Virus record (IMG/VR): IMGVR_UViG_3300044640_001495
Location: 62,001 to 126,000 of that record
Strand: one strand, 5' to 3'
DNA length: 64,000 bases
Shown piece by piece: positions 1-7,591 of the stretch (the first letter of the stretch is position 1; every line of letters starts with the position of its first letter). A program made the position numbers and the translations under genes. Below the pieces are notes generated by a model that saw only the letters and a program-made list of their open reading frames with translations, made no database searches and was not told the DNA's origin.

Positions 1-32
1 AGTATAAACTCAACGAAGGTAAGTAAAATATT

Positions 33-107
33 GGGCTGTTGGTATAGATGGGAACACAGTAGCTTTGCAAGCTTCAATCCCCGGTTCGATCCCGGGACGG
101 TCCACCA
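33..107 (+). tRNA. tRNA-Ala(UGC)
   Basis: Cloverleaf: acceptor GGGCUGU/ACGGUCC with the G3.U70 Ala determinant, anticodon loop UU-UGC-AA, T loop UUCGAUC, encoded CCA. Confidence 0.93.
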
Positions 108-124
108 AGTTTTAAGTAAGTATT

Positions 125-198
125 GCCCCTTTAGTATAATGGTATTACACCTGTTTTGTAATCAGGTTACGGCAGTTCGATTCTGTCAAGGGGCACCA
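125..198 (+). tRNA. tRNA-Thr(UGU)
   Basis: Acceptor GCCCCUU/AAGGGGC, anticodon loop UU-UGU-AA, GUUCGAUUC T arm, ACCA end. Confidence 0.93.
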
Positions 199-212
199 TT
201 TTTTAGGTACAT

Positions 213-830
213 ATGAAATTTGCATATTTTAATCCAACTGTGATGGCTGTGGCCGATGTGCCGGCGGATGTATTCACCAATTTGAAAAGTCTAGTAGATA
301 CTGCACATACCAAGACAGAACTCAATGATGAGGGTAATCCTGCTATTAGCATACGTGGCGGACAGCAGATTCAACTCTTGCCAAATCAATTCAATCTAGA
401 CACAGGGCATATCAAACGCTATGTAGAAGCGCAGTGCCAGGAATACATGGATGCGCAGATCAAACAAAGCGGTCGCAACGATCTGTCAGCATTTCAACCC
501 ATGTTGGTTTCAGCATGGACTATACGTCAGACTGCAGGCGACTATCAGGCCATGCACAATCATGAAGCACATATCAGCGGCAACATCTACATTGATGTTC
601 CTGATCTTGATCTCACAGACAACATATCGGATGCTGTGATTGAGTTTAGATTGCCGGTGGTAAGAAACCCTGCACATTTTGTTTTTGTAGATCAATGGCG
701 GTTTACCCCAAATCCCATGAAGATGATCATATTTCCCAGCTATATTCCACACACTGTGTATCCGTGGAAAGGCAAGGGCCACAGAACAATTTTGGCTTGG
801 GATGTGAAATTAGTGGCAAAAAAGACTTGA
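213..830 (+). CDS. Putative 2OG-Fe(II) oxygenase (TIGR02466-like)
   Basis: HNH-x-x-x-ISG-x-x-Y motif and C-terminal FPSYIPHTVYP...R pattern typical of phage 2OG-Fe(II) oxygenases. Confidence 0.7.
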   Translation: MKFAYFNPTVMAVADVPADVFTNLKSLVDTAHTKTELNDEGNPAISIRGGQQIQLLPNQFNLDTGHIKRYVEAQCQEYMDAQIKQSGRNDLSAFQPMLVSAWTIRQTAGDYQAMHNHEAHISGNIYIDVPDLDLTDNISDAVIEFRLPVVRNPAHFVFVDQWRFTPNPMKMIIFPSYIPHTVYPWKGKGHRTILAWDVKLVAKKT

Positions 831-855
831 CATTTAGTCTAAAGAGTGCTATAAT
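827..855 (+). promoter_or_regulatory. Consensus sigma70 promoter
   Basis: TTGACA(827-832)-17 nt-TATAAT(850-855). Confidence 0.85.
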
Positions 856-878
856 AGTTTTGTTGTGTAGCAATACAT

Positions 879-1117
879 GACCGGTAAAGCGAAGGGTAGA
901 TGAGAATAGACACAAAGGTGTGAGCTTCATGCTTACTCCAAACTTACAACCATCTGAACAATGGCCGTGTTTATGTGATCCGATCCCTAATAGAATGTCA
1001 TTTGTTAATCGGAAATATATGGACCTCTGTGTATTGTATTTTGCACATTGTCAACGAAGACTACAACTCTTCATTGTATATTGTCCGGTCTATTACTTGA
1101 CCTTTCGTTGACCCGTT
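879..1117 (+). ncRNA. Candidate structured RNA or long 5' leader upstream of rpoZ
   Basis: Long-range complementary segments 888-897/1100-1109, 905-911/1088-1094 and 910-919/1023-1032 plus internal hairpins; lies just downstream of a consensus promoter; family not recognised. Confidence 0.55.
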
Positions 1118-1138
1118 ATTTTTAACCTAAAGGAATAT

Positions 1139-1387
1139 ATGAACAAACAACTTTCATCAGAAGACGCAGTGGCAGCATACGGCGATAGATTTGAAATGGT
1201 ATTGGCTGCAAGTCAACGAGCTCGAGAGTTGAAAAACGGTCATGCTCCTAGAGTTGATAAAGGTAGTCATGGATTTATTGTTACTGCTCTAAACGAAATC
1301 GAACAGGGCAAGTATACTAGACTTGATTTTTTAAAAACTGTTAAAACAAAGAAGAAAGGACAACGTGATGAACATTTCCCTACGTAA
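1139..1387 (+). CDS. rpoZ: RNA polymerase omega subunit homolog
   Basis: DRFEMVLAASQRAREL matches the omega core motif; strong SD (AAGGA) upstream; about 82 aa. Confidence 0.75.
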   Translation: MNKQLSSEDAVAAYGDRFEMVLAASQRARELKNGHAPRVDKGSHGFIVTALNEIEQGKYTRLDFLKTVKTKKKGQRDEHFPT

Positions 1388-1940
1388 GGCAAACGCAGTT
1401 CAGAATTCGATCAATGAAGCAATCAAGGGTATTAAGATTGATACCAGCATTGAGATCAACGAGTTCCAGAACGCACAAGATGAGATTCAAAAGGCCAATA
1501 ACCTTTTGATCACAAATGATGGTCGCCGACAAAAGCTGTTGTTGGCCTTGTACAACATTCGCGGACTGGTTGGTACAGCCAACGCAAATTGCGGAATTGA
1601 CCTGTCATTGGCCAAGGCTGCGTTCATTGACAAGCGTGTCACACAGTTGACTGAAATAGCCACATTGAATCCAGTGAGTGACTTGGCTGTGGTCAACGGC
1701 AAGTTGGACAAGATCCGCAGCCGCAAAGAAGAAAGCCGTGCAAGTTTGTACGGCCGTGACGACACGGTATCTACCAGTGTTGTTGGACGAGATCAAATTG
1801 ATCAAGCCAAGGCAGAGATCCAAAATCTCAAGAAGCAGAAACAAAAACTCAATGATGAAGTTCTTGAGTTAAATATCAAAACTGAAATTCCACTCAGTGA
1901 TGATGTTGTAGCAACACTGCAAGCTGAAGGCTTGATCTAA
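1365..1940 (+). CDS. Hypothetical phage protein (coiled-coil rich)
   Basis: 191-aa ORF with upstream AAGGA SD and codon usage consistent with neighbours. Confidence 0.75.
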   Translation: MMNISLRKANAVQNSINEAIKGIKIDTSIEINEFQNAQDEIQKANNLLITNDGRRQKLLLALYNIRGLVGTANANCGIDLSLAKAAFIDKRVTQLTEIATLNPVSDLAVVNGKLDKIRSRKEESRASLYGRDDTVSTSVVGRDQIDQAKAEIQNLKKQKQKLNDEVLELNIKTEIPLSDDVVATLQAEGLI

Positions 1941-1942
1941 CA

Positions 1943-2148
1943 GACCCCGGGCGCCCTTGCCCGTTATACAAAGGGGGTGGGGCAGTCACCATAAAGAGTG
2001 CTAGGTTTGTAGTGCAAAGGCCTTCCGATCCTGTGTAGGGAATCCGGAGACGCATTAGGTGAGGTTTAACACCTTCCCATAAGAATAAATGTTATGGACA
2101 GAGTAACCGCTCAGTCTAGGGCTCCTGTGGTGGGAGTAGCTAGGCACT
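1943..2148 (+). ncRNA. Candidate multi-branched structured RNA
   Basis: GC-rich intergenic stretch with no ORF; closing stem 1997-2004/2140-2148 encloses hairpins at about 2022-2049, 2057-2074, 2077-2097, 2097-2116 and 2122-2136. Confidence 0.55.
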
Positions 2149-2154
2149 AATTAT

Positions 2155-2230
2155 CGCGGGATGGAGAAGGTGGTATCTCGGAAGTCTCATAAGCTTCAGA
2201 TCGTCGGTTCGACTCCGACTCCCGCAACCA
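2155..2230 (+). tRNA. tRNA-Met(CAU), initiator-like acceptor (C1.A72)
   Basis: Acceptor CGCGGGA/UCCCGCA, anticodon loop CU-CAU-AA, GGUUCGACUCC T arm, ACCA end. Confidence 0.92.
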
Positions 2231-2240
2231 ATTTGAGGAC

Positions 2241-2993
2241 ATGATGTTTTTATTTCGAAGAAAAAAGATAATTGTAGATTGTTTTATAGATAATCCAGTT
2301 GTGCAGAATCTGTTCAAAATTGATCATGCTCATAAATTTGTTCCCGCAGAGTGGAAACAATTGCCACCTATGGTTGATGTAAAATCACTGCAGGATCCTA
2401 GAAGCAAGGAATTAATTCCAATACCAACAGCCAAGAGATGTGTTGGTATGGTCAATTTGTTTACCTCTGGATTTATACTACCTAGTTGGACAGATTTTAA
2501 AATTGAAATGATGAAGGACGGATTATTTTTTAAACATGATCCTATGGGCGGCCTAGATGCCAATCCCCATCCTCCCTTTATGTATTGGGAAGAATTGTAC
2601 AAGGGATACCAGCATGTGAAAATTTCTAGTCCTTGGTTAATCAAAGAAAAAACTGGTGTTAAATTTGCCTGGAATCAATGTACCTATCACAATACAGATA
2701 GACATGCTAACTACCATGCGTTATCGGGAATATTAGATTTTAAAGCACAGCATAATACACATGTGAATATTTTTGTGAAAAAGGGAACTACACTAACGGT
2801 TAATGCAGGTGATCCGTTGGTACAGCTTATCCCGTTAACTGAACGTGAAGTAGAATTAAAACATCATGAAGTTGATGCTAACGAGTACGAAAAGATTTCA
2901 AAAGAGTTTACTCAAAAATCTATGTGGGGAGGGCAACATAGATCATTATTAACTTCAATGCCCGCATCAAAATGTCCGTTTGGATTCAAATGA
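2241..2993 (+). CDS. Hypothetical phage protein
   Basis: 250-aa ORF with GAGG SD upstream; no diagnostic motif recognised. Confidence 0.75.
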   Translation: MMFLFRRKKIIVDCFIDNPVVQNLFKIDHAHKFVPAEWKQLPPMVDVKSLQDPRSKELIPIPTAKRCVGMVNLFTSGFILPSWTDFKIEMMKDGLFFKHDPMGGLDANPHPPFMYWEELYKGYQHVKISSPWLIKEKTGVKFAWNQCTYHNTDRHANYHALSGILDFKAQHNTHVNIFVKKGTTLTVNAGDPLVQLIPLTEREVELKHHEVDANEYEKISKEFTQKSMWGGQHRSLLTSMPASKCPFGFK

Positions 2994-3139
2994 AATTATA
3001 CGAAGCAACAATTAGAGTAGACGGCAAAGAATTTAAGGATCGTGTGGGTGCTAATTCGGCAGAGGAAGCACGTATGTTATTACAACAGAGACACGGTCCC
3101 AGAGCAGTACCATATGTTCCTCATATGATACCAAGTTAA
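2990..3139 (+). CDS. Small hypothetical protein (49 aa, MKLYEATIRVDGKEFKDRV...)
   Basis: ATG overlaps the previous stop (ATGA coupling) and the ORF fills the gap to tRNA-Pro; below the ORF-track length cut-off. Confidence 0.6.
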   Translation: MKLYEATIRVDGKEFKDRVGANSAEEARMLLQQRHGPRAVPYVPHMIPS

Positions 3140-3142
3140 TTT

Positions 3143-3219
3143 CGGAGTGTGGCGCAGTCTGGTAGCGCACCTGGTTTGGGACCAGGGGGTCCAAGGTTCG
3201 AATCCTTGTACTCCGACCA
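3143..3219 (+). tRNA. tRNA-Pro(UGG)
   Basis: CGGAGUG...UACUCCG acceptor, anticodon loop UU-UGG-GA, T arm GGUUCGAAUCC, ACCA end. Confidence 0.95.
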
Positions 3220-3239
3220 TTTTTTAAAAAGAGAAAACA

Positions 3240-3428
3240 ATGACTAAAGACGAATACGAAGCAGCTACAGCCACAGCCATGGCAGAGTTCCTGGCCAAGG
3301 GTGGTGTGATACAACAGATCGAAAGAAATGTCAGCAGCAGAGAAGAAGGAGCCAGTTATTCATCATGGTCTAAGAAAAAACCTTCAACTTCACCTTTGGC
3401 CAATCCTCCAGAGGATCACGAAACTTGA
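3240..3428 (+). CDS. Hypothetical protein
   Basis: 62-aa ORF between tRNAs; AEFLAKGGVIQQI pattern recalls small phage proteins. Confidence 0.6.
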   Translation: MTKDEYEAATATAMAEFLAKGGVIQQIERNVSSREEGASYSSWSKKKPSTSPLANPPEDHET

Positions 3429-3445
3429 TTGTTAAATAATAGTAT

Positions 3446-3519
3446 GCGGGGTTAGTTTAATGGTAAAACAGCAGATTTCCAATCTTCGGTCGAGAGTTCG
3501 ATTCTCTCACTCCGCTCCA
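3446..3519 (+). tRNA. tRNA-Gly(UCC)
   Basis: GCGGGGU/ACUCCGC acceptor, U73, anticodon loop UU-UCC-AA, CCA end. Confidence 0.92.
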
Positions 3520-3527
3520 AGGATATA

Positions 3528-4100
3528 ATGAAAGTAATAGATCAAAACGAAGTATTTCGCAAGTTTAATTTCAGTTCAGTAATTACACAATCTGACAATG
3601 AAGAAGCCATAGGCATTATAAAAGCAATCATTGCTGACGGGAATTACTTTACTAATAGTCCCAAATATCAAACTAAAGAAAATATATTTGCTAGACCCGA
3701 AGCTGTATGGTTAAAGTATCGTATGAGTTTTTTGTTCAGTGTATTCATGTACCTAGGACGTGAAGTAAAAGTTAATAACATGATGGCTTGGTCGTTTATG
3801 ACCAATCTTGAGAGTGCCGAGGATCGTGAAAATCTGTGGCATCATCACTGGCATCCTACTCATGACACTGCCAAAATGTTGAGTGGTGTTTTGTATCTGC
3901 ACATACCCGATGATGTTAAAGATTACGATTACTGTGGTACAGAAATGGCTCCTAACGGGCCAGCAGGTGACGGCAAGTTGTTTGTAAAACCTAGTGAATA
4001 CGCATGGTTGATCTATCCCAGTGATCAGTGGCACAGGCCGGGTGTTGTACAAAGCAATCAGTATCGTTTTATATTGGCAGCAGATATAGAATATGTTTAA
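3528..4100 (+). CDS. Putative 2OG-Fe(II) oxygenase-like protein
   Basis: WHHHWH...LSGVLYLH...WHRPG...R pattern. Confidence 0.55.
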   Translation: MKVIDQNEVFRKFNFSSVITQSDNEEAIGIIKAIIADGNYFTNSPKYQTKENIFARPEAVWLKYRMSFLFSVFMYLGREVKVNNMMAWSFMTNLESAEDRENLWHHHWHPTHDTAKMLSGVLYLHIPDDVKDYDYCGTEMAPNGPAGDGKLFVKPSEYAWLIYPSDQWHRPGVVQSNQYRFILAADIEYV

Positions 4101-4101
4101 T

Positions 4102-4175
4102 GCGGGATTAGTTTAATGGTCAAACGAAACCTTGCCAAGGTTTAGTCAGGAGTTCGATTCTCCTATCCCGCTCCA
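4102..4175 (+). tRNA. tRNA-Gly(GCC)
   Basis: GCGGGAU/AUCCCGC acceptor, AAACC-UUGCCAA-GGUUU anticodon arm, UCCA end. Confidence 0.95.
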
Positions 4176-4180
4176 AATTT

Positions 4181-4255
4181 CCGGCCATAGTATAATGGAT
4201 AATACAAAGAGCTTCTACCTCTTGAATGTGGGTTCGATTCCTGCTGGCCGGACCA
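4181..4255 (+). tRNA. tRNA-Arg(UCU)
   Basis: CCGGCCA/UGGCCGG acceptor, AAGAG-CUUCUAC-CUCUU anticodon arm, ACCA end. Confidence 0.93.
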
Positions 4256-4256
4256 C

Positions 4257-4330
4257 GCTCTTGTAGTAAAATGGTATTACACAGTCTTGGTAAGACTGAA
4301 TTCCAAGTTCAATTCTTGGCTAGAGCACCA
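4257..4330 (+). tRNA. tRNA-Thr(GGU)
   Basis: GCUCUUG/CUAGAGC acceptor, CAGUC-UUGGUAA-GACUG anticodon arm, ACCA end. Confidence 0.92.
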
Positions 4331-4331
4331 C

Positions 4332-4360
4332 TTGACAAATTGAAAGAAAGACAGTATAAT
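4332..4360 (+). promoter_or_regulatory. Consensus sigma70 promoter
   Basis: TTGACA(4332-4337)-17 nt-TATAAT(4355-4360). Confidence 0.85.
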
Positions 4361-4366
4361 AGTCGT

Positions 4367-4591
4367 ATGTACAAAGTAATAGAAAAACAAAGCTCAACGG
4401 AGTTTGCTAATTTGGATTTAGCAATGGCATTTGCCAAAGAATTAAATGTGTTCGTTACCATCCAAGGTGGCGAATTTGAAATCGTAGGAGTATTTGGTGT
4501 AGACAGCATCAAAGATGGTAAGTGTCCAGATGGCGTTAAATACGATTGGAACAAAGCGAGCCGAATTGGCCGCGTTAAAAAGGAAAGATAA
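4367..4591 (+). CDS. Hypothetical phage protein (start refined to MYKVIEK)
   Basis: ATG just downstream of the promoter; the longer ORF-track start lies inside tRNA genes. Confidence 0.7.
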   Translation: MYKVIEKQSSTEFANLDLAMAFAKELNVFVTIQGGEFEIVGVFGVDSIKDGKCPDGVKYDWNKASRIGRVKKER

Positions 4592-4598
4592 AAACTAG

Positions 4599-4817
4599 AT
4601 GGCCAAAGAAGATATAATCGAATTAACAGGCGTTGTAGAAGAAGTCTTGCCCGGTAATATGTTTAAGGTAAAAGTAGACAATCTACCCAATGTCTTATTG
4701 TGCTATACTAGTGGCAGACTCAAGCAACACAAAATTCGTATCATTCTAGGCGATCGTGTCAAGGTGGAAGTTAGCCCCTATGACATGACCAAAGGCCGAG
4801 TCTCTTATAGATTGTAA
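4599..4817 (+). CDS. infA: Translation initiation factor IF-1
   Basis: MAKEDIIELTGVVEEVLPGNMFKV...IRIILGDRVKVEVSPYDMTKGRVSYR is the canonical IF-1 sequence pattern. Confidence 0.95.
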   Translation: MAKEDIIELTGVVEEVLPGNMFKVKVDNLPNVLLCYTSGRLKQHKIRIILGDRVKVEVSPYDMTKGRVSYRL

Positions 4818-5095: not shown

Positions 5096-5698
5096 ATGCC
5101 AAGTGTATTCTTAGTAAGCGACACGCACTTTGGACACACAGGTGTATGCCGCTTCACACGCAACGATGGTGAAAAATTAAGACCGTGGACGGATCCAGAT
5201 GAAATGGACGAAGCTATGGTTAAGGCGTGGAACGAACGGGTAAAACCCACTGACAAGGTCTACCACTTAGGTGATGTTGTTATTAACCGCAAAGCGTTAG
5301 GAACGTTACGTAGGTTAAACGGTGACAAGGTATTAATCCGCGGTAATCACGACATCTTCCGCGATGACGAGTATAGAATGTACTTTAGAGAATTACGTGC
5401 ATACCATGTTATGAACGGCATGATCTTAAGCCATATCCCGTTACACTCGGATTCGATGGGTCGTTTTGGAGTTAACATTCACGGACATTTACACTCAAAT
5501 CGAGTGCGTAAGGCCCGTGGAGTTGATGTTAAAACAGGAGAAATCTTATACAGTGATGAGATTGATCCTAGATATCATTGTGTTTGTGTAGAACAAACTC
5601 CGGACTTTGCTCCTATCTTGTTTGAAGATGTGTTAAAGCGCATCGAAGCAGAAGGCGGATCAGTAGGTTTTAAGAACGGCAACGGACCTACAATGTAA
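5096..5698 (+). CDS. Calcineurin-like metallophosphoesterase
   Basis: SDTHFGH, GD, GNHD, SH and HGHLH metal-binding motifs. Confidence 0.9.
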   Translation: MPSVFLVSDTHFGHTGVCRFTRNDGEKLRPWTDPDEMDEAMVKAWNERVKPTDKVYHLGDVVINRKALGTLRRLNGDKVLIRGNHDIFRDDEYRMYFRELRAYHVMNGMILSHIPLHSDSMGRFGVNIHGHLHSNRVRKARGVDVKTGEILYSDEIDPRYHCVCVEQTPDFAPILFEDVLKRIEAEGGSVGFKNGNGPTM

Positions 5699-5806: not shown

Positions 5807-7591
5807 ATGGCCTTACAAATCAGACGTGGACCGACTGCAGATCGAATGAGTTATACCCCAGTTGTGGGCGAACTTGTTTGGGATACCTCAACAAGTTCAC
5901 TGTATATTGGAAACGGTACCACTGCCGGCGGATTGCCCGCAGGTACCCTAGTCACAGAAGATGTACAAGATATTGCATCCTCAATGCTGATTAACGGCAC
6001 CCACCAAAACATTACTTTTACCTATGATGATACATTAGGTAGAATAAATTCCACATTTGATCTTTCCACATTTAATGGAACATTAACTGCTGATGGATTT
6101 ATTGGGTCACACTATGCCAACGATTCTACGCTGTTGTTAAACGCACTAACAGGTGCTGTTAATTTAAACGGAACAGTCAAAGGACACGTTATTCCGTCTA
6201 CAAACATTGCCTACGATTTAGGTAGCTCATCCTTTAGATTCAGAGATCTATATCTAAGCGGATCTAGTATTATACTTGGTAGTGCTACTATCACATCCAC
6301 AGGCTCGTCTGTTAATTTACCTGCGGGATCTACTGTAAACGGAATTGTTCTAGGTGCTGCAATTGAATCCGGAATGAATTACAACATCAATCTAGTAGGC
6401 GATGATAGCACAGTTATTATCAATGCTAGAACAAAAGCAGTCAATGCAGCCAGCTTAACCATCGGCTCAGCAGTGAATTTGCCTGCAGGATCTACTATAA
6501 ACGGAGTTGCAATTGGTGCTGGTTCAGGAATTGAAGCTGGTATGAACTACAATATTAATATTGTAGGAGATGATAGCACATTAATGCTGAATGCTAGCAC
6601 ACGGTCAATTACTGCGGCAGGTGGATTTACTGGCAATTTATTAGGTAATGTAACTGGAAATATAATAACCAATTTGATTTCATCTGCAGATTCAAGTGCT
6701 ATCATTTGCGACACTCCGATTACATTCCAAACTAACGCACGGGTTGAGGGCACTCTGAGGGTAGTAGATGGAGGCGACTTTCAATCTACGAATTACCTAA
6801 GTTTTCCTCTTGCGATCACTGCTGCTCATGAAGATGATCAAGCCGCTAGATTAGTTATAAGAAGATCTAGAGGAACAATTGATACTCCTTTATCATTAAT
6901 CAATAACGATAGAGTAGGAAGCATTCAGTTTAATGGTTATGACGGCACAAACACTATCTCAGCGGCATCAATTCAAGCAAGAGTTACTGGCACAGTATCC
7001 TCTGGCGTAATGCCCTCATCCTTGAGATTTTTAGTTACAAATACTGCAGGGAATGAACTAGAAGCAGGCCGCTTTACCGAAGCTGGAAATCTTTTTCTTT
7101 TCGCTGACGACGTTTCTGATGGACCTTTACAGATTTTTTCTGGGCATAACAGTGCTGTAAACGCCAGCAACATTATCTTAGTTAGGGCAAGAGGAGTACC
7201 AAGTTTCCCTGGACAAACTGGGACACCTTTAGCGGTTCAAAATGGAGACCCAATCTTCGACTTTGCCTTCGCTGGTTACGACGGAACAAACAATACCGGA
7301 GTAGCTCAAATGCGTGTGGTCACTGATGGTGCGGTTTCCACAGGAGTAGTTCCTGGTAGATTTGAATTTTTTACCAGCAATACCAGCGGAGTCTCTGCTA
7401 GCAGACTAACAATTGCTACAACTAAAACTACTTTTAATAATATGCCTGTGCTTCCTACATATGCCGACGAGACAGCAGCCGATACTGCTATTGGCGGATC
7501 AGGAAACAGAGTGAACGGTATGATGTACTACGACACAGGAGCAGCAAAAATAAAAGCTGTGGCCGGCGGTTCTTGGACAGCTATACATTAA
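5807..7591 (+). CDS. Virion structural / tail-fibre-like protein
   Basis: N-terminal LQIRRG...GELVWDT...LYIGNG-T-GG (Mtd-N-like) motif, Gly/Thr/Ser-rich beta repeats and internal duplications. Confidence 0.75.
   Translation: MALQIRRGPTADRMSYTPVVGELVWDTSTSSLYIGNGTTAGGLPAGTLVTEDVQDIASSMLINGTHQNITFTYDDTLGRINSTFDLSTFNGTLTADGFIGSHYANDSTLLLNALTGAVNLNGTVKGHVIPSTNIAYDLGSSSFRFRDLYLSGSSIILGSATITSTGSSVNLPAGSTVNGIVLGAAIESGMNYNINLVGDDSTVIINARTKAVNAASLTIGSAVNLPAGSTINGVAIGAGSGIEAGMNYNINIVGDDSTLMLNASTRSITAAGGFTGNLLGNVTGNIITNLISSADSSAIICDTPITFQTNARVEGTLRVVDGGDFQSTNYLSFPLAITAAHEDDQAARLVIRRSRGTIDTPLSLINNDRVGSIQFNGYDGTNTISAASIQARVTGTVSSGVMPSSLRFLVTNTAGNELEAGRFTEAGNLFLFADDVSDGPLQIFSGHNSAVNASNIILVRARGVPSFPGQTGTPLAVQNGDPIFDFAFAGYDGTNNTGVAQMRVVTDGAVSTGVVPGRFEFFTSNTSGVSASRLTIATTKTTFNNMPVLPTYADETAADTAIGGSGNRVNGMMYYDTGAAKIKAVAGGSWTAIH

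What the first reader, a model, noticed from the sequence alone, without database searches (positions are those of the whole stretch)
1943..2148. Multi-hairpin non-coding element 6 nt upstream of tRNA-Met
Seen: a GC-rich 200-nt gap with no ORF. A closing helix (AGTGCTAG 1997-2004 with CTAG-G-CACT 2140-2148) encloses about five hairpins (2022-2049, AGGTG/CACCT 2057-2074, CCATAA/TTATGG 2077-2097, GACAGAG/CTCAGTC 2097-2116, CTCC/GGAG 2122-2136), with further GC stems at 1944-1990. RNase P cleavage of the adjacent tRNA would define its 3' end. Established: large ncRNAs such as GOLLD and ROOL lie beside tRNAs in phages, but they are much longer. Inference: a possibly undescribed compact phage ncRNA.
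Basis: partly seen in the sequence, partly recalled or inferred. Interest (0 to 1): 0.65.

Follow-up and report, generated by a model that had tools for sequence, protein, structure and literature searches.

The report
Four-pseudoknot RNA in phage tRNA arrays
The gap upstream of tRNA-Met encodes a real, roughly 210-nt RNA that folds into four consecutive pseudoknots plus an invariant 3' domain; it belongs to a widespread family, matching nothing in Rfam 15, found inside the tRNA gene arrays of uncultured freshwater jumbo phages, and its function is unknown.

Summary
Window 1941-2152 (+) is a non-coding, G+C-enriched gap that ends 6 nt before tRNA-Met.

More than 120 IMG/VR phage contigs carry the same element, always on the tRNA strand. 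It usually sits 0-10 nt after a tRNA or an ORF stop and 5-9 nt before the next tRNA. Comparative analysis of about 100 distinct copies supports four tandem H-type pseudoknots followed by two hairpins with invariant unpaired bases.

No relative turned up elsewhere:
- No Rfam 15 family matches.
- No cultured phage matches, by blastn or by covariance model on T4 and eight related jumbo phages.
- None of the 185,579 bacterial and archaeal reference genomes scanned has the core motif.

Lake metatranscriptome contigs pile up on the element far above its flanks.

The host phage is a 353-kb jumbo phage with a T4-type (gp23) capsid, 32 tRNAs and its own permuted tmRNA. Related arrays also hold GOLLD and other modular RNAs.

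Best reading: a stable small RNA, co-transcribed with the tRNAs and cut out by tRNA-processing nucleases, acting in trans. Its target is unknown.

The parts
1941..2152 (+). The whole RNA gene (four-pseudoknot RNA), as delimited by covariance model R1.
   Evidence: R1 matches L001:1501-1712 (= window 1941-2152) at 162 bits over model positions 1-209. It is a single copy in the 353-kb genome.
1948..1975 (+). PK1, an H-type pseudoknot. S1 pairs 1948-1952 with 1959-1963; S2 pairs 1954-1958 with 1971-1975.
   Evidence: S2 is 90-96% paired, with 2-5 pair types per position. S1 partners vary (CGU/ACG, CGG/CCG, CGGGC/GCCCG, CCUG/CAGG and others). Pseudoknot-finder score is 21.6, against 2.5 for shuffles.
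1976..2002 (+). PK2. Sa pairs 1976-1979 with 1987-1990; Sb pairs 1981-1984 with 1999-2002.
   Evidence: On a sequence-only alignment, Sa is 82.7% paired (at most 39% slid) and Sb is 76.6% (at most 44% slid). Finder score is 19.4 versus 5.2 for shuffles. Sa types include CGU/ACG, GGU/ACC, GGC/GCC, CGC/GCG and GGUG/CACC.
2003..2057 (+). PK3. S3 pairs 2003-2006 with 2020-2023; S4 pairs 2010-2015 with 2052-2057. It encloses hairpin H3 (2024-2027/2045-2048 and 2029-2032/2038-2041).
   Evidence: S3 was not part of the model, yet is 94-96% paired with compensatory changes such as GGGC/GCCC. S4 is 79-89% paired and all six pairs show double changes.
2058..2094 (+). PK4. S5 pairs 2058-2059 with 2077-2078 and 2062-2064 with 2072-2074. 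S6 pairs 2067-2071 with 2090-2094. An A-rich loop lies at 2079-2089.
   Evidence: S6 was not in the model. It is 66-67% paired, with 3-5 pair types per position (UAACA/UGUUA, AUCAC/GUGAU, CUGU/ACAG, AGCA/UGCU and others). Finder score is 14.5 versus 3.0. The register is the least certain of the four.
2096..2145 (+). Invariant 3' domain. It begins with single-stranded GGACAG (2096-2101, its last G also opening H5), then hairpin H5 (2101-2104/2109-2112, loop UAAC), then hairpin H6 (2114-2119/2140-2145) with inner helix 2121-2125/2133-2137 and an internal loop G / RG.
   Evidence: Invariant columns are listed. H6 is 98-99% paired with up to 4 pair types per position. Inner H6 is 97% paired with up to 5 pair types. 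This region supplied the 26-nt motif that retrieved 120 or more contigs.
2146..2154 (+). Nine unpaired bases between H6 and tRNA-Met (ACUAAUUAU).
   Evidence: Read directly from the sequence. In relatives the next tRNA starts 54-58 nt after the motif start, which is 5-9 nt after H6, when no extra module intervenes.
2155..2230 (+). tRNA-Met (CAU). Its 5' processing would set the 3' boundary of the RNA.
   Evidence: ARAGORN and RF00005 at 54.8 bits.
1365..1940 (+). Upstream ORF P0001 (191 aa, no known family). Its stop codon abuts the element.
   Evidence: A homologue lies next to the element in only 36 of 120 motif loci, so it is a synteny neighbour rather than an obligate partner.
827..855 (+). 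Consensus sigma-70-type promoter-like site (TTGACA-17-TATAAT with TG), the likely start of the transcript that carries the element.
   Evidence: It matches 12 of 12 positions. The next such site is at 4332-4360, and no + strand terminator-like site lies between them. This is a consensus match only.

Best explanation
Window 1941-2152 is a gene for a stand-alone structured small RNA of about 205-212 nt. It belongs to a family not found in Rfam 15 or in the papers searched, carried in the tRNA arrays of uncultured freshwater jumbo phages with a T4-type (gp23) capsid.

**Shown**
- The sequence and fold are conserved in about 100 distinct copies.
- The fold is four consecutive H-type pseudoknots (PK1-PK4). 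An invariant 3' domain follows: single-stranded GGACAG, a short UAAC-loop hairpin, and a long bipartite hairpin.
- The element always lies on the tRNA strand, a few nucleotides from the flanking tRNAs.
- RNA-library contigs from lakes accumulate on it.

**Inferred**
- It is transcribed as part of a polycistronic ORF/tRNA precursor, from the consensus promoter-like site at 827-855.
- It is released by the tRNA-processing machinery. RNase P cutting at +1 of the downstream tRNA, followed by 3' trimming back to H6, would set the 3' end. Endonucleolytic cleavage in the short A-rich linker after the upstream tRNA or stop codon would set the 5' end.
- PK1 at the 5' end and H6 at the 3' end make it nuclease-resistant, so it persists as a stable RNA.

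**Speculative**
- It acts in trans. The pseudoknot chain would serve as a rigid scaffold, and the invariant unpaired bases of the 3' domain as a binding surface for a protein or ribonucleoprotein of translation or RNA metabolism.
For: **Family and conservation**
- 76 P0001 loci were fetched, and 45 of them have the element between the stop codon and tRNA-Met.
- Model R1 finds 102 copies in 98 loci, at 29-181 bits.

**Fold**
- Whole-structure counts on A1 and A2 give 77-80% pairing, against at most 48% when slid. Covariation is 0.36-0.41 against at most 0.16, with 0 of 500 shuffles reaching it.
- Per-helix counts on a sequence-only alignment support the helices.
- Pseudoknot-finder scores against shuffles support PK1, PK2 and PK4.
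- All 61 pairs are canonical and non-conflicting in the window.

**Context**
- The element is on the same strand as the tRNAs. The upstream tRNA ends 147-175 nt before the motif, and the downstream tRNA starts 54-58 nt after it, or later.
- Type II copies are flanked by tRNAs at 2-3 nt.
- There are promoter-like sites and no intervening terminator.

**Expression**
- In X17, contig depth over 1939-2151 is 764-1002, against 2.8-7.7 over the ORF and 0-1.8 downstream.
- In X19 it is 36-63 against 0-3.8. In X15 it is 71-138 against 20-37.

**Not something known**
-.
Against: - No RNA ends were mapped. The RNA evidence is contig-level only, so it shows neither strand, nor 5'/3' ends, nor a discrete size.
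- The deepest contigs differ from the window at about 7 of 103 positions. They come from relatives, whose flanks would not map, and this inflates the contrast with the flanks.
- MFE folding is no better than shuffles.
- PK4 and S1 are supported less well than the other helices.
- The element is dispensable in the clade. 21 of 24 related loci without it at this site lack it within 3 kb.
- No partner protein or target was identified. The trans-acting role is inference from its architecture and from analogy with T4 rnaC/rnaD, GOLLD and tmRNA.
Confidence: 0.62

Rival explanations
1. A cis-acting processing or insulator element of the polycistronic tRNA transcript. A rigid folded spacer would keep neighbouring tRNAs and mRNA from misfolding, or would position RNase P or RNase E. 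It would have no function once released.
For: - It always sits inside tRNA arrays at tight, constant spacing.
- Other modular structured spacers fill the same gaps in relatives.
- It is patchy and dispensable.
Against: - Four pseudoknots plus about 25 invariant unpaired bases is far more than a spacer needs.
- Most tRNA junctions in the same arrays are 2-10 nt with no such element.
- RNA contigs accumulate on the element itself.
Confidence: 0.14
2. A decoy or anti-defence RNA. The stable pseudoknot RNA would sequester a host factor, such as a tRNA-targeting nuclease, an exoribonuclease, ribosomal protein S1 or a defence sensor. This is a specific version of the trans-acting idea.
For: - It is an accessory gene with patchy distribution in a hypervariable genome region.
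- One or two divergent copies occur per array.
- It co-occurs with tRNAs, tmRNA and GOLLD, which are commonly interpreted as translation or defence-related cargo (background knowledge).
Against: There is no direct evidence, no linked protein gene and no cultured host.
Confidence: 0.1
3. A new self-cleaving or otherwise catalytic RNA that helps cut the array transcript. The invariant 3' domain would be the catalytic core.
For: - Invariant unpaired nucleotides cluster in a compact pseudoknotted RNA next to processing sites.
- Small ribozymes beside phage tRNAs are known (HDV-like 'theta' ribozymes; from my own knowledge, not checked here).
Against: - No hit to any Rfam ribozyme model, even at E<=10.
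- PK1 lacks the nested P3/P1.1 topology of HDV-like ribozymes (read from the sequence).
- RNase P already accounts for the 3' boundary.
- Contigs run across most of the element.
Confidence: 0.06
4. A 3'-UTR structure that protects or regulates the upstream mRNA (P0001). It could be an exonuclease-resistant block or a stop-codon-proximal recoding pseudoknot.
For: - PK1 starts 7 nt after the TAA of ORF 1365-1940.
- A P0001 homologue directly precedes the element in many loci.
Against: - In 45 of 110 distinct copies the upstream neighbour within 260 nt is a tRNA, not an ORF.
- P0001 is absent from 84 of 120 motif loci.
- Many P0001 genes run straight into tRNA-Met at +7 with no element.
- The in-frame extension hits a stop after 17 codons, and alignment indels break any reading frame.
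Confidence: 0.04
5. A degenerate tRNA, tRNA-like RNA or tmRNA fragment.
For: - It lies in a tRNA array.
- The 8-mer GCUCAGUC in the 3' domain equals a common tRNA D-arm sequence and gives 6-8 bit local matches of R1 to tRNA genes.
- A run of pseudoknots recalls tmRNA PK2-PK4 (background knowledge).
Against: - ARAGORN and the Rfam tRNA and tmRNA models find nothing in it.
- It has no T-arm, no acceptor stem and no CCA.
- H6 covariation contradicts a D-arm fold.
- The genome has its own permuted tmRNA at G000:24882-25318, with no similarity to the element.
Confidence: 0.03

Closest known systems
Phage T4 stable RNAs rnaC and rnaD (species 1 and 2 RNAs)
   Same: - Small stable RNAs of unknown function, encoded in the tRNA cluster of a phage with a gp23-type capsid.
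- On the tRNA strand, separated from the neighbouring tRNA and from each other by 1-6 nt.
- Presumed to be released by tRNA-processing enzymes (background knowledge).
   Different: - No detectable homology. R1 scores 6 bits or less on the T4 tRNA region, with filters off.
- T4 rnaD ends in CACCA and rnaC has a T-arm-like GGTTCGAATCC. The present RNA has neither, and is built from pseudoknots.
- The lengths are 119 and 139 nt, against about 210 nt.
GOLLD and ROOL (large ornate RNAs of phages and prophages, Rfam RF02032 and RF03087)
   Same: - Phage-borne, highly structured, pseudoknot-containing RNAs of unknown function that sit among tRNA genes.
- GOLLD occurs in the same array as this element in relative L152.
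   Different: - This RNA is two to three times shorter.
- No match to either covariance model.
- No evidence here for multimeric assembly.
tmRNA pseudoknot string (PK2-PK4) and the upstream pseudoknot domain of tobamovirus 3' UTRs
   Same: Several H-type pseudoknots are placed head to tail, next to a tRNA or tRNA-like unit. This resemblance is architectural and comes from background knowledge.
   Different: - No tRNA-like domain, no tag reading frame, no CCA end, and no sequence or model match.
- The adjoining tRNA is an ordinary, separate gene that differs between copies.
Unnamed candidate structured RNAs catalogued from IMG/VR (PMC10690425, 8,495 DNA-virus candidates)
   Same: It draws on the same data source (IMG/VR) and the same kind of evidence (covariation). 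The family may be among those candidates.
   Different: The paper's text describes no tRNA-array pseudoknot RNA, and its supplementary tables are not held, so overlap could not be checked.

Membership tests
Any Rfam 15 family (4227 models) | A covariance-model match at or near the gathering score. | tested here: not met
   Nothing overlaps 1941-2152 at gathering score. At E<=10 the only overlap is a chance 14.8-bit FTX_1 hit on the - strand. At E<=0.5, nothing overlaps ten element copies in seven relatives, while tRNA, GOLLD and tmRNA are found beside them.
tRNA or degenerate tRNA | A cloverleaf with acceptor, D, anticodon and T arms. | tested here: not met
   ARAGORN and RF00005 find none inside the element. 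There is only an 8-nt D-arm-like string.
tmRNA (one-piece or permuted) | A tRNA-like domain (acceptor stem plus T-arm, CCA end) and a tag reading frame with a resume codon. | tested here: not met
   ARAGORN -m finds the genome's tmRNA elsewhere, at G000:24882-25318. Local alignment of the element to it scores 20, against 18.1 +/- 2.7 for shuffles. The Rfam tmRNA models are silent on the element.
tmRNA (one-piece or permuted) | A run of H-type pseudoknots. | tested here: met
   Four tandem pseudoknots. This is a resemblance only and not sufficient for membership.
GOLLD / ROOL | A match to RF02032 or RF03087, and a size of 400-800 nt. | tested here: not met
   No hit on the window. The GOLLD model does work in this setting, scoring 198 bits in L152.
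T4 rnaC / rnaD-type stable RNAs | Encoded within a phage tRNA cluster, on the same strand, a few nt from a tRNA. | tested here: met
T4 rnaC / rnaD-type stable RNAs | Sequence or structure homology to T4 rnaC/rnaD, and a tRNA-like end (T-arm or CCA). | tested here: not met
   R1 with filters off on the T4 locus gives 6 bits or less. The element has no T-arm and no CCA.
T4 rnaC / rnaD-type stable RNAs | Accumulates as a discrete stable RNA, excised by RNase P and other tRNA-processing enzymes. | tested here: inconclusive
   Contig depth in lake RNA libraries peaks on the element. Contigs cannot show ends, strand or size.
Known self-cleaving ribozymes (hammerhead, HDV-like, twister, twister-sister, pistol, hatchet, hairpin) | A match to the class consensus or covariance model. 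| tested here: not met
   No ribozyme family appears at E<=10.
Known self-cleaving ribozymes (hammerhead, HDV-like, twister, twister-sister, pistol, hatchet, hairpin) | Site-specific self-cleavage. | not testable with these tools
   This needs an in-vitro transcript assay.
Riboswitch or transcription attenuator | Lies in a 5' leader of a coding gene, with an expression platform (a terminator, or sequestration of the ribosome-binding site). | tested here: not met
   It is followed by tRNA genes or other RNA modules, not by coding genes. No + strand terminator-like site lies within 1-4600.
New family proposed here (tRNA-array four-pseudoknot RNA) | PK1-PK4 plus the 3' motif GGACAGRGUAAC..CUCAGU...GGGC-hairpin-GURGC, on the tRNA strand within a phage tRNA array. 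| tested here: met
   The window copy scores 162 bits over the full model. All 61 pairs form. The context is shown.

The most novel reading that the evidence does not exclude
This RNA is the founding member of a new functional class of phage effector RNAs. It would be a compact, exonuclease-proof rod of four stacked pseudoknots, delivered through the tRNA-processing pathway. Its invariant 3' domain would dock onto a core host machine (ribosome or S1, RNase P or RNase E, or a tRNA-directed defence nuclease) to reprogramme translation or blunt defence. Alternatively, like GOLLD and ROOL, it could self-assemble into an RNA-only higher-order particle. Together with the other modular RNAs seen in the same arrays, it would mean that jumbo-phage 'tRNA arrays' are really islands of diverse non-coding RNA genes.
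Probability: 0.2. Interest if true: 0.85.

Novelty: new variant of a known kind. Interest (0 to 1): 0.62.

Why it matters
Phage tRNA clusters have long been known to carry a few stable RNAs of unknown function, such as T4 rnaC and rnaD. More recently GOLLD and ROOL have been linked to them.

This finding adds a widespread, compact and unusually pseudoknot-rich family to that list. It has clear boundaries and a well-supported fold, and it shows signs of high abundance in natural lake RNA.

It gives RNA structural biologists a tractable 210-nt target made of four tandem pseudoknots. It gives annotators a model for a region that is currently left blank in hundreds of jumbo-phage contigs.

It also points to the tRNA arrays of freshwater jumbo phages as reservoirs of several further modular RNAs. 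If a target is found, it could explain why large phages invest in RNA cargo beyond tRNAs.

Tried and rejected
**Structure**
- Single-sequence MFE folding of both strands gave z-scores of -0.25 and +0.28, which is uninformative because pseudoknots are not modelled.
They are contradicted in the few sequences where position 2116 changes, because it covaries with the H6 partner instead.
- mafft-qinsi structural alignment was unavailable.

**Searches for known relatives**
- Rfam at gathering and at permissive thresholds found nothing.
- blastn against 50,697 cultured-phage records gave only tRNA hits or chance hits.
- An exact-motif scan of 185,579 prokaryote reference genomes gave 0 hits.
- The covariance model found nothing on the T4 tRNA region. 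It also found nothing on eight cultured jumbo phages with the closest capsid proteins: Phosso, Vibrio 2.275.O, PA5oct, 121Q, GAP32, CBB, XaC1 and XbC2.

**Other ideas**
- Homology to the genome's own tmRNA: none.
- A functional link to upstream protein P0001: rejected, because it is a neighbour in only 36 of 120 loci. Pfam and PHROGs give it no function.
- A coding or read-through reading: the frame closes after 17 codons and alignment indels are not multiples of three.

**Literature**
- Five full-text searches found no description of such an RNA.
- The IMG/VR candidate-RNA catalogue could not be checked because its supplements are not held.
- A paper on a new aquatic jumbo-phage lineage concerns a different clade.
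Full report
**1. What is at the site**

The window is bases 62,001-126,000 of a 353-kb IMG/VR phage record estimated to be 98% complete. Between the TAA of ORF 1365-1940 and tRNA-Met (CAU) at 2155-2230 lie 214 nt without a credible ORF. G+C there is about 0.5, against 0.37-0.44 nearby.

The region belongs to a large tRNA array. The genome has 32 tRNAs, 29 of them in one run, all on the + strand, plus a permuted tmRNA 37 kb upstream of the window.

The phage has a T4-type major capsid protein (Pfam Gp23, E=2.6e-96). Its closest cultured relatives by that protein are Rak2/121Q-like and PA5oct-like jumbo phages and Sinorhizobium phage Phosso, at 65-74% identity.

A perfect sigma-70-type consensus sits at 827-855 and the next one at 4332-4360. 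No + strand terminator-like site lies between them. The element is therefore probably co-transcribed with the upstream ORFs and the downstream tRNAs. This rests on consensus matches only.

**2. Is it more than chance?**

Not by thermodynamics. The MFE of either strand is no better than dinucleotide shuffles, with z of -0.25 and +0.28. The evidence is comparative.

- Fetching loci through the upstream protein gave 76 related loci.
- In 45 of them, 125-380 nt separate the stop codon from tRNA-Met. In many others the tRNA follows at +7.
- The inserted sequences share a core of about 210 nt. Its 3' half is more conserved at the DNA level than the flanking protein is at the amino-acid level, for example 93.5% nucleotide identity where the downstream protein P0002 is 73% identical.
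- The same motif hit none of the 185,579 prokaryote reference genomes.
- A covariance model built from 25 sequences (R1) found 102 copies in 98 loci at 29-181 bits. These include a second, divergent subtype present as an extra copy in some arrays.
- The window's genome has exactly one copy.

**3. Genomic grammar**

ARAGORN was run on the flanks of 110 distinct copies, and the element is always on the tRNA strand.

- When a tRNA lies upstream (45 of 110 copies; Thr-UGU in 20), it often has an encoded CCA. It ends 147-175 nt before the motif, which is within about 10 nt of the first pseudoknot.
- The next tRNA is Met-CAU in 44 copies and Gly-UCC in 30, with other isoacceptors in the rest. It starts 54-58 nt after the motif start, which is 5-9 nt after the last helix. 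Otherwise it starts further away, with an additional RNA module in between.
- Type II copies are flanked by tRNAs at 2-3 nt on both sides.
- The upstream protein P0001 is a neighbour in only 36 of 120 motif-defined loci.
- 21 of 24 P0001 loci that lack the element at this site lack it within 3 kb.

The element is therefore a self-contained, accessory gene of plastic tRNA arrays. It is not a 3' UTR of P0001.

**4. The fold**

RNAalifold on a plain MAFFT alignment already recovered a long-range helix and the 3' hairpins, with many compensatory changes. Inspecting the alignments led to the model below. Coordinates are window positions, and all 61 pairs are canonical and non-overlapping in the window.

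| Element | Pairings |
|---|---|
| PK1 | S1 1948-1952/1959-1963; S2 1954-1958/1971-1975 |
| PK2 | Sa 1976-1979/1987-1990; Sb 1981-1984/1999-2002 |
| PK3 | S3 2003-2006/2020-2023; S4 2010-2015/2052-2057; encloses hairpin H3 |
| PK4 | S5 2058-2059/2077-2078 and 2062-2064/2072-2074; S6 2067-2071/2090-2094 |
| 3' domain | single-stranded GGACAG; H5 2101-2104/2109-2112; H6 2114-2119/2140-2145; inner helix 2121-2125/2133-2137 |

Whole-structure counts:
- On the 25-sequence MAFFT alignment, 77% of cells pair, against 34-46% when slid.
- On the 102-sequence model alignment, 79.5% pair, against at most 48%. Covariation is 0.405 against at most 0.144. 51 of 59 pairs show double changes, and 0 of 500 shuffles reach these values.

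Stems S1, S3 and S6 were left out of the model, so the alignment was not fitted to them. S3 is still 94% paired with compensatory changes, and S6 is 66% paired with 4-5 pair types per position.

Per-helix pairing on a sequence-only L-INS-i alignment of 96 copies:

| Helix | Paired |
|---|---|
| S2 | 90% |
| Sa | 83% |
| Sb | 77% |
| S3 | 94% |
| S4 | 84% |
| H5 | about 100% |
| H6 | 98% |
| inner H6 | 97% |

Slid controls for these are mostly at or below 50%, except for S2, whose slid values reach 65%.

A constrained pseudoknot finder gave these scores for real sequences against shuffles:

| Pseudoknot | Real | Shuffled |
|---|---|---|
| PK1 | 21.6 | 2.5 |
| PK2 | 19.4 | 5.2 |
| PK4 | 14.5 | 3.0 |

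The weakest parts are S1 (54% paired in fixed columns, because its length varies), the register of S5/S6, and H3, which is clearly a hairpin but variable.

The CCATAA/TTATGG hairpin pairs in 56% against 50%. Neither is conserved, and both use bases that belong to better-supported helices.

Unpaired but invariant bases cluster in the 3' domain: GGACAG, GUAAC, GGGC and GU.GC. That pattern points to a tertiary core or a binding site rather than a mere spacer.

**5. Expression**

One search for public runs found 14 lake DNA metagenomes that hold the stretch and six lake or freshwater metatranscriptomes that hold parts of it. Contigs of four RNA libraries were laid on window 1300-3400.

| Run | Depth over 1939-2151 | Upstream ORF | Downstream |
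|---|---|---|---|
| X17 | 764-1002 | 2.8-7.7 | 0-1.8 (tRNA-Met and next ORF) |
| X19 | 36-63 | 0-3.8 | 0-2.5 |
| X15 | 71-138 | 20-37 | 35-75 (through 2577) |

Caveats:
- These are contigs, so there are no ends, no strand and no size.
- Depths sum all matching contigs.
- The deepest ones differ at about 7 of 103 positions. They come from relatives whose flanks would not map at 90% identity or above.

The result argues for high steady-state abundance of the family's RNA in nature. It does not yet show a discrete species.

**6. What it is not**

- No Rfam 15 family matches. In seven relatives nothing overlaps the ten copies, whereas tRNAs, a GOLLD RNA (L152, 198 bits) and a permuted tmRNA (L130, 97 bits) are found in the same arrays.
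- It is not a tRNA or tmRNA.
- It is not detectably related to T4 rnaC/rnaD, which occupy the analogous position after tRNA-Arg.
- It is not present in cultured phages, by blastn or by covariance model in eight jumbo phages with the most similar capsids.
- It is not a riboswitch or attenuator, because tRNAs rather than coding genes follow it and there is no terminator.
- Literature searches found no description.
- A 2023 catalogue of 8,495 unnamed IMG/VR candidates may include it, but that could not be checked.

**7. How it most likely works**

*Shown:* a conserved, pseudoknotted RNA gene embedded in tRNA arrays on the tRNA strand, and abundant in RNA libraries.

*Inferred:*
- It is made as part of a polycistronic precursor.
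- It is freed by the enzymes that free the tRNAs. RNase P at +1 of the downstream tRNA, then 3' trimming to H6, would set the 3' end. Endonucleolytic cleavage in the short A-rich linker after the upstream tRNA or stop codon would set the 5' end.
- PK1 and H6 cap the ends, which would give a nuclease-resistant stable RNA.

*Speculative:* the stacked pseudoknots act as a rigid scaffold. The invariant 3' domain would bind a protein or RNP of translation or RNA metabolism, or a defence factor.

The closest functional analogues are T4 rnaC/rnaD and GOLLD/ROOL. The closest architectural analogue is the tmRNA pseudoknot string. Membership of any of these families fails on tested defining features.

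**8. Novelty and verdict**

This is a real family that matches nothing in Rfam 15, the sequence collections searched or the papers searched. It belongs to a known general kind (phage tRNA-cluster stable RNAs) but has a distinct architecture of four tandem pseudoknots. I rate it a new variant of a known kind.

My confidence by claim:
- about 0.9 that it is a genuine structured RNA family;
- about 0.6 for excision as a stable trans-acting RNA;
- low for any specific target.

Noticed in passing
Relatives, for example L086, L088, L114 and L124 (about 93 nt); L091, L126 and L173 (about 130 nt); L013 and L071 (about 170 nt); L144, L150 and L132 (two modules each). All lie between the element and the next tRNA.: The 50-300 nt 'extras' after the element are separate modular RNAs. 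Each is closed by a long A/U-rich terminal helix (CUUUAUUAAAAUACAU...AUGUAUUUUAAUAAAG). One class has an acceptor-like stem (GCUCUUUG/CAGAGAGC) plus a T-arm-like GGUUCGAUUCC, reminiscent of T4 rnaC. The window copy lacks them. These look like further undescribed RNA families.
   Followed up: partly
L152:2226-2690 (-) and L130:13-295 (-): Rfam finds a GOLLD RNA (198 bits) and a permuted tmRNA (97 bits) in the same tRNA arrays as the element.
   Followed up: no
G000:C1:24882-25318, outside the window (about 37 kb upstream of it): ARAGORN calls a permuted (two-piece) tmRNA with tag ANADTFDFSAMSFTGNTVSGKSKVALAA. The genome also has 32 tRNAs, 29 in one array at 58.1-66.3 kb and 3 at 327 kb on the other strand.
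   Followed up: partly
L110:8037-8240 (-), L084:8030-8232 (-), L171:3217-3418 (-), L152:5103-5332 (-), and also L099, L131 and L157: A divergent 'type II' subfamily scores 29-71 bits. It has the same PK1, PK2, S3 and 3' domain, but a different middle and a GUGGAAA-type terminal loop. In four of these arrays (L110, L084, L171 and L152) it is a second copy beside a higher-scoring first copy.
   Followed up: partly
L121:1589-1824 (-), L117:9611-9758 (+), L021:3574-3608 (+): These are rearranged copies. In L121 the 5' half is replaced by the 5' two-thirds of a tRNA, joined at GG|CGACUUGAG. L117 has lost PK1-PK3 by a deletion that fuses the ORF end to PK4. L021 keeps only a GUGUCUAGG-GAAA-CCUAGACAC remnant of H6.
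   Followed up: no
Window 2102 and 2109 (element positions 162 and 169): Two purines in H5 are strictly anti-correlated: A with G in 68 copies and G with A in 34. Exactly one of the two flanking pairs is therefore a wobble in every copy. This may indicate a direct purine-purine contact or two sublineages.
   Followed up: no
Window 2109-2116: GCUCAGUC is identical to a common tRNA D-arm string, and it gives small local hits of model R1 on tRNA genes of T4 and Phosso. This is either coincidence or a trace of tRNA ancestry.
   Followed up: partly
Window 213-830, 3528-4100, 5096-5698 and 5807-7591: Protein genes are interleaved with the tRNAs: two 2OG-Fe(II) oxygenase-like proteins, a calcineurin-like phosphoesterase, and a 594-aa protein with an Mtd_N (major tropism determinant) N-terminal domain, which may hint at a diversity-generating retroelement target.
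   Followed up: no
L084, L157, L171 and L131, just after the element copy: A conserved Shine-Dalgarno-like AAAGGAG, followed by an ATG and a short reading frame beginning MDSDKSGK, sits between the element and tRNA-Lys. It is a possible micro-ORF.
   Followed up: no
Window 1950-2071, in RNA run X16: A 1,529-nt contig from a relative matches both flanks but carries 122 unrelated letters in place of 120 nt of the element's 5' half. This shows modular replacement of PK1-PK3 between close relatives (table 5).
   Followed up: no
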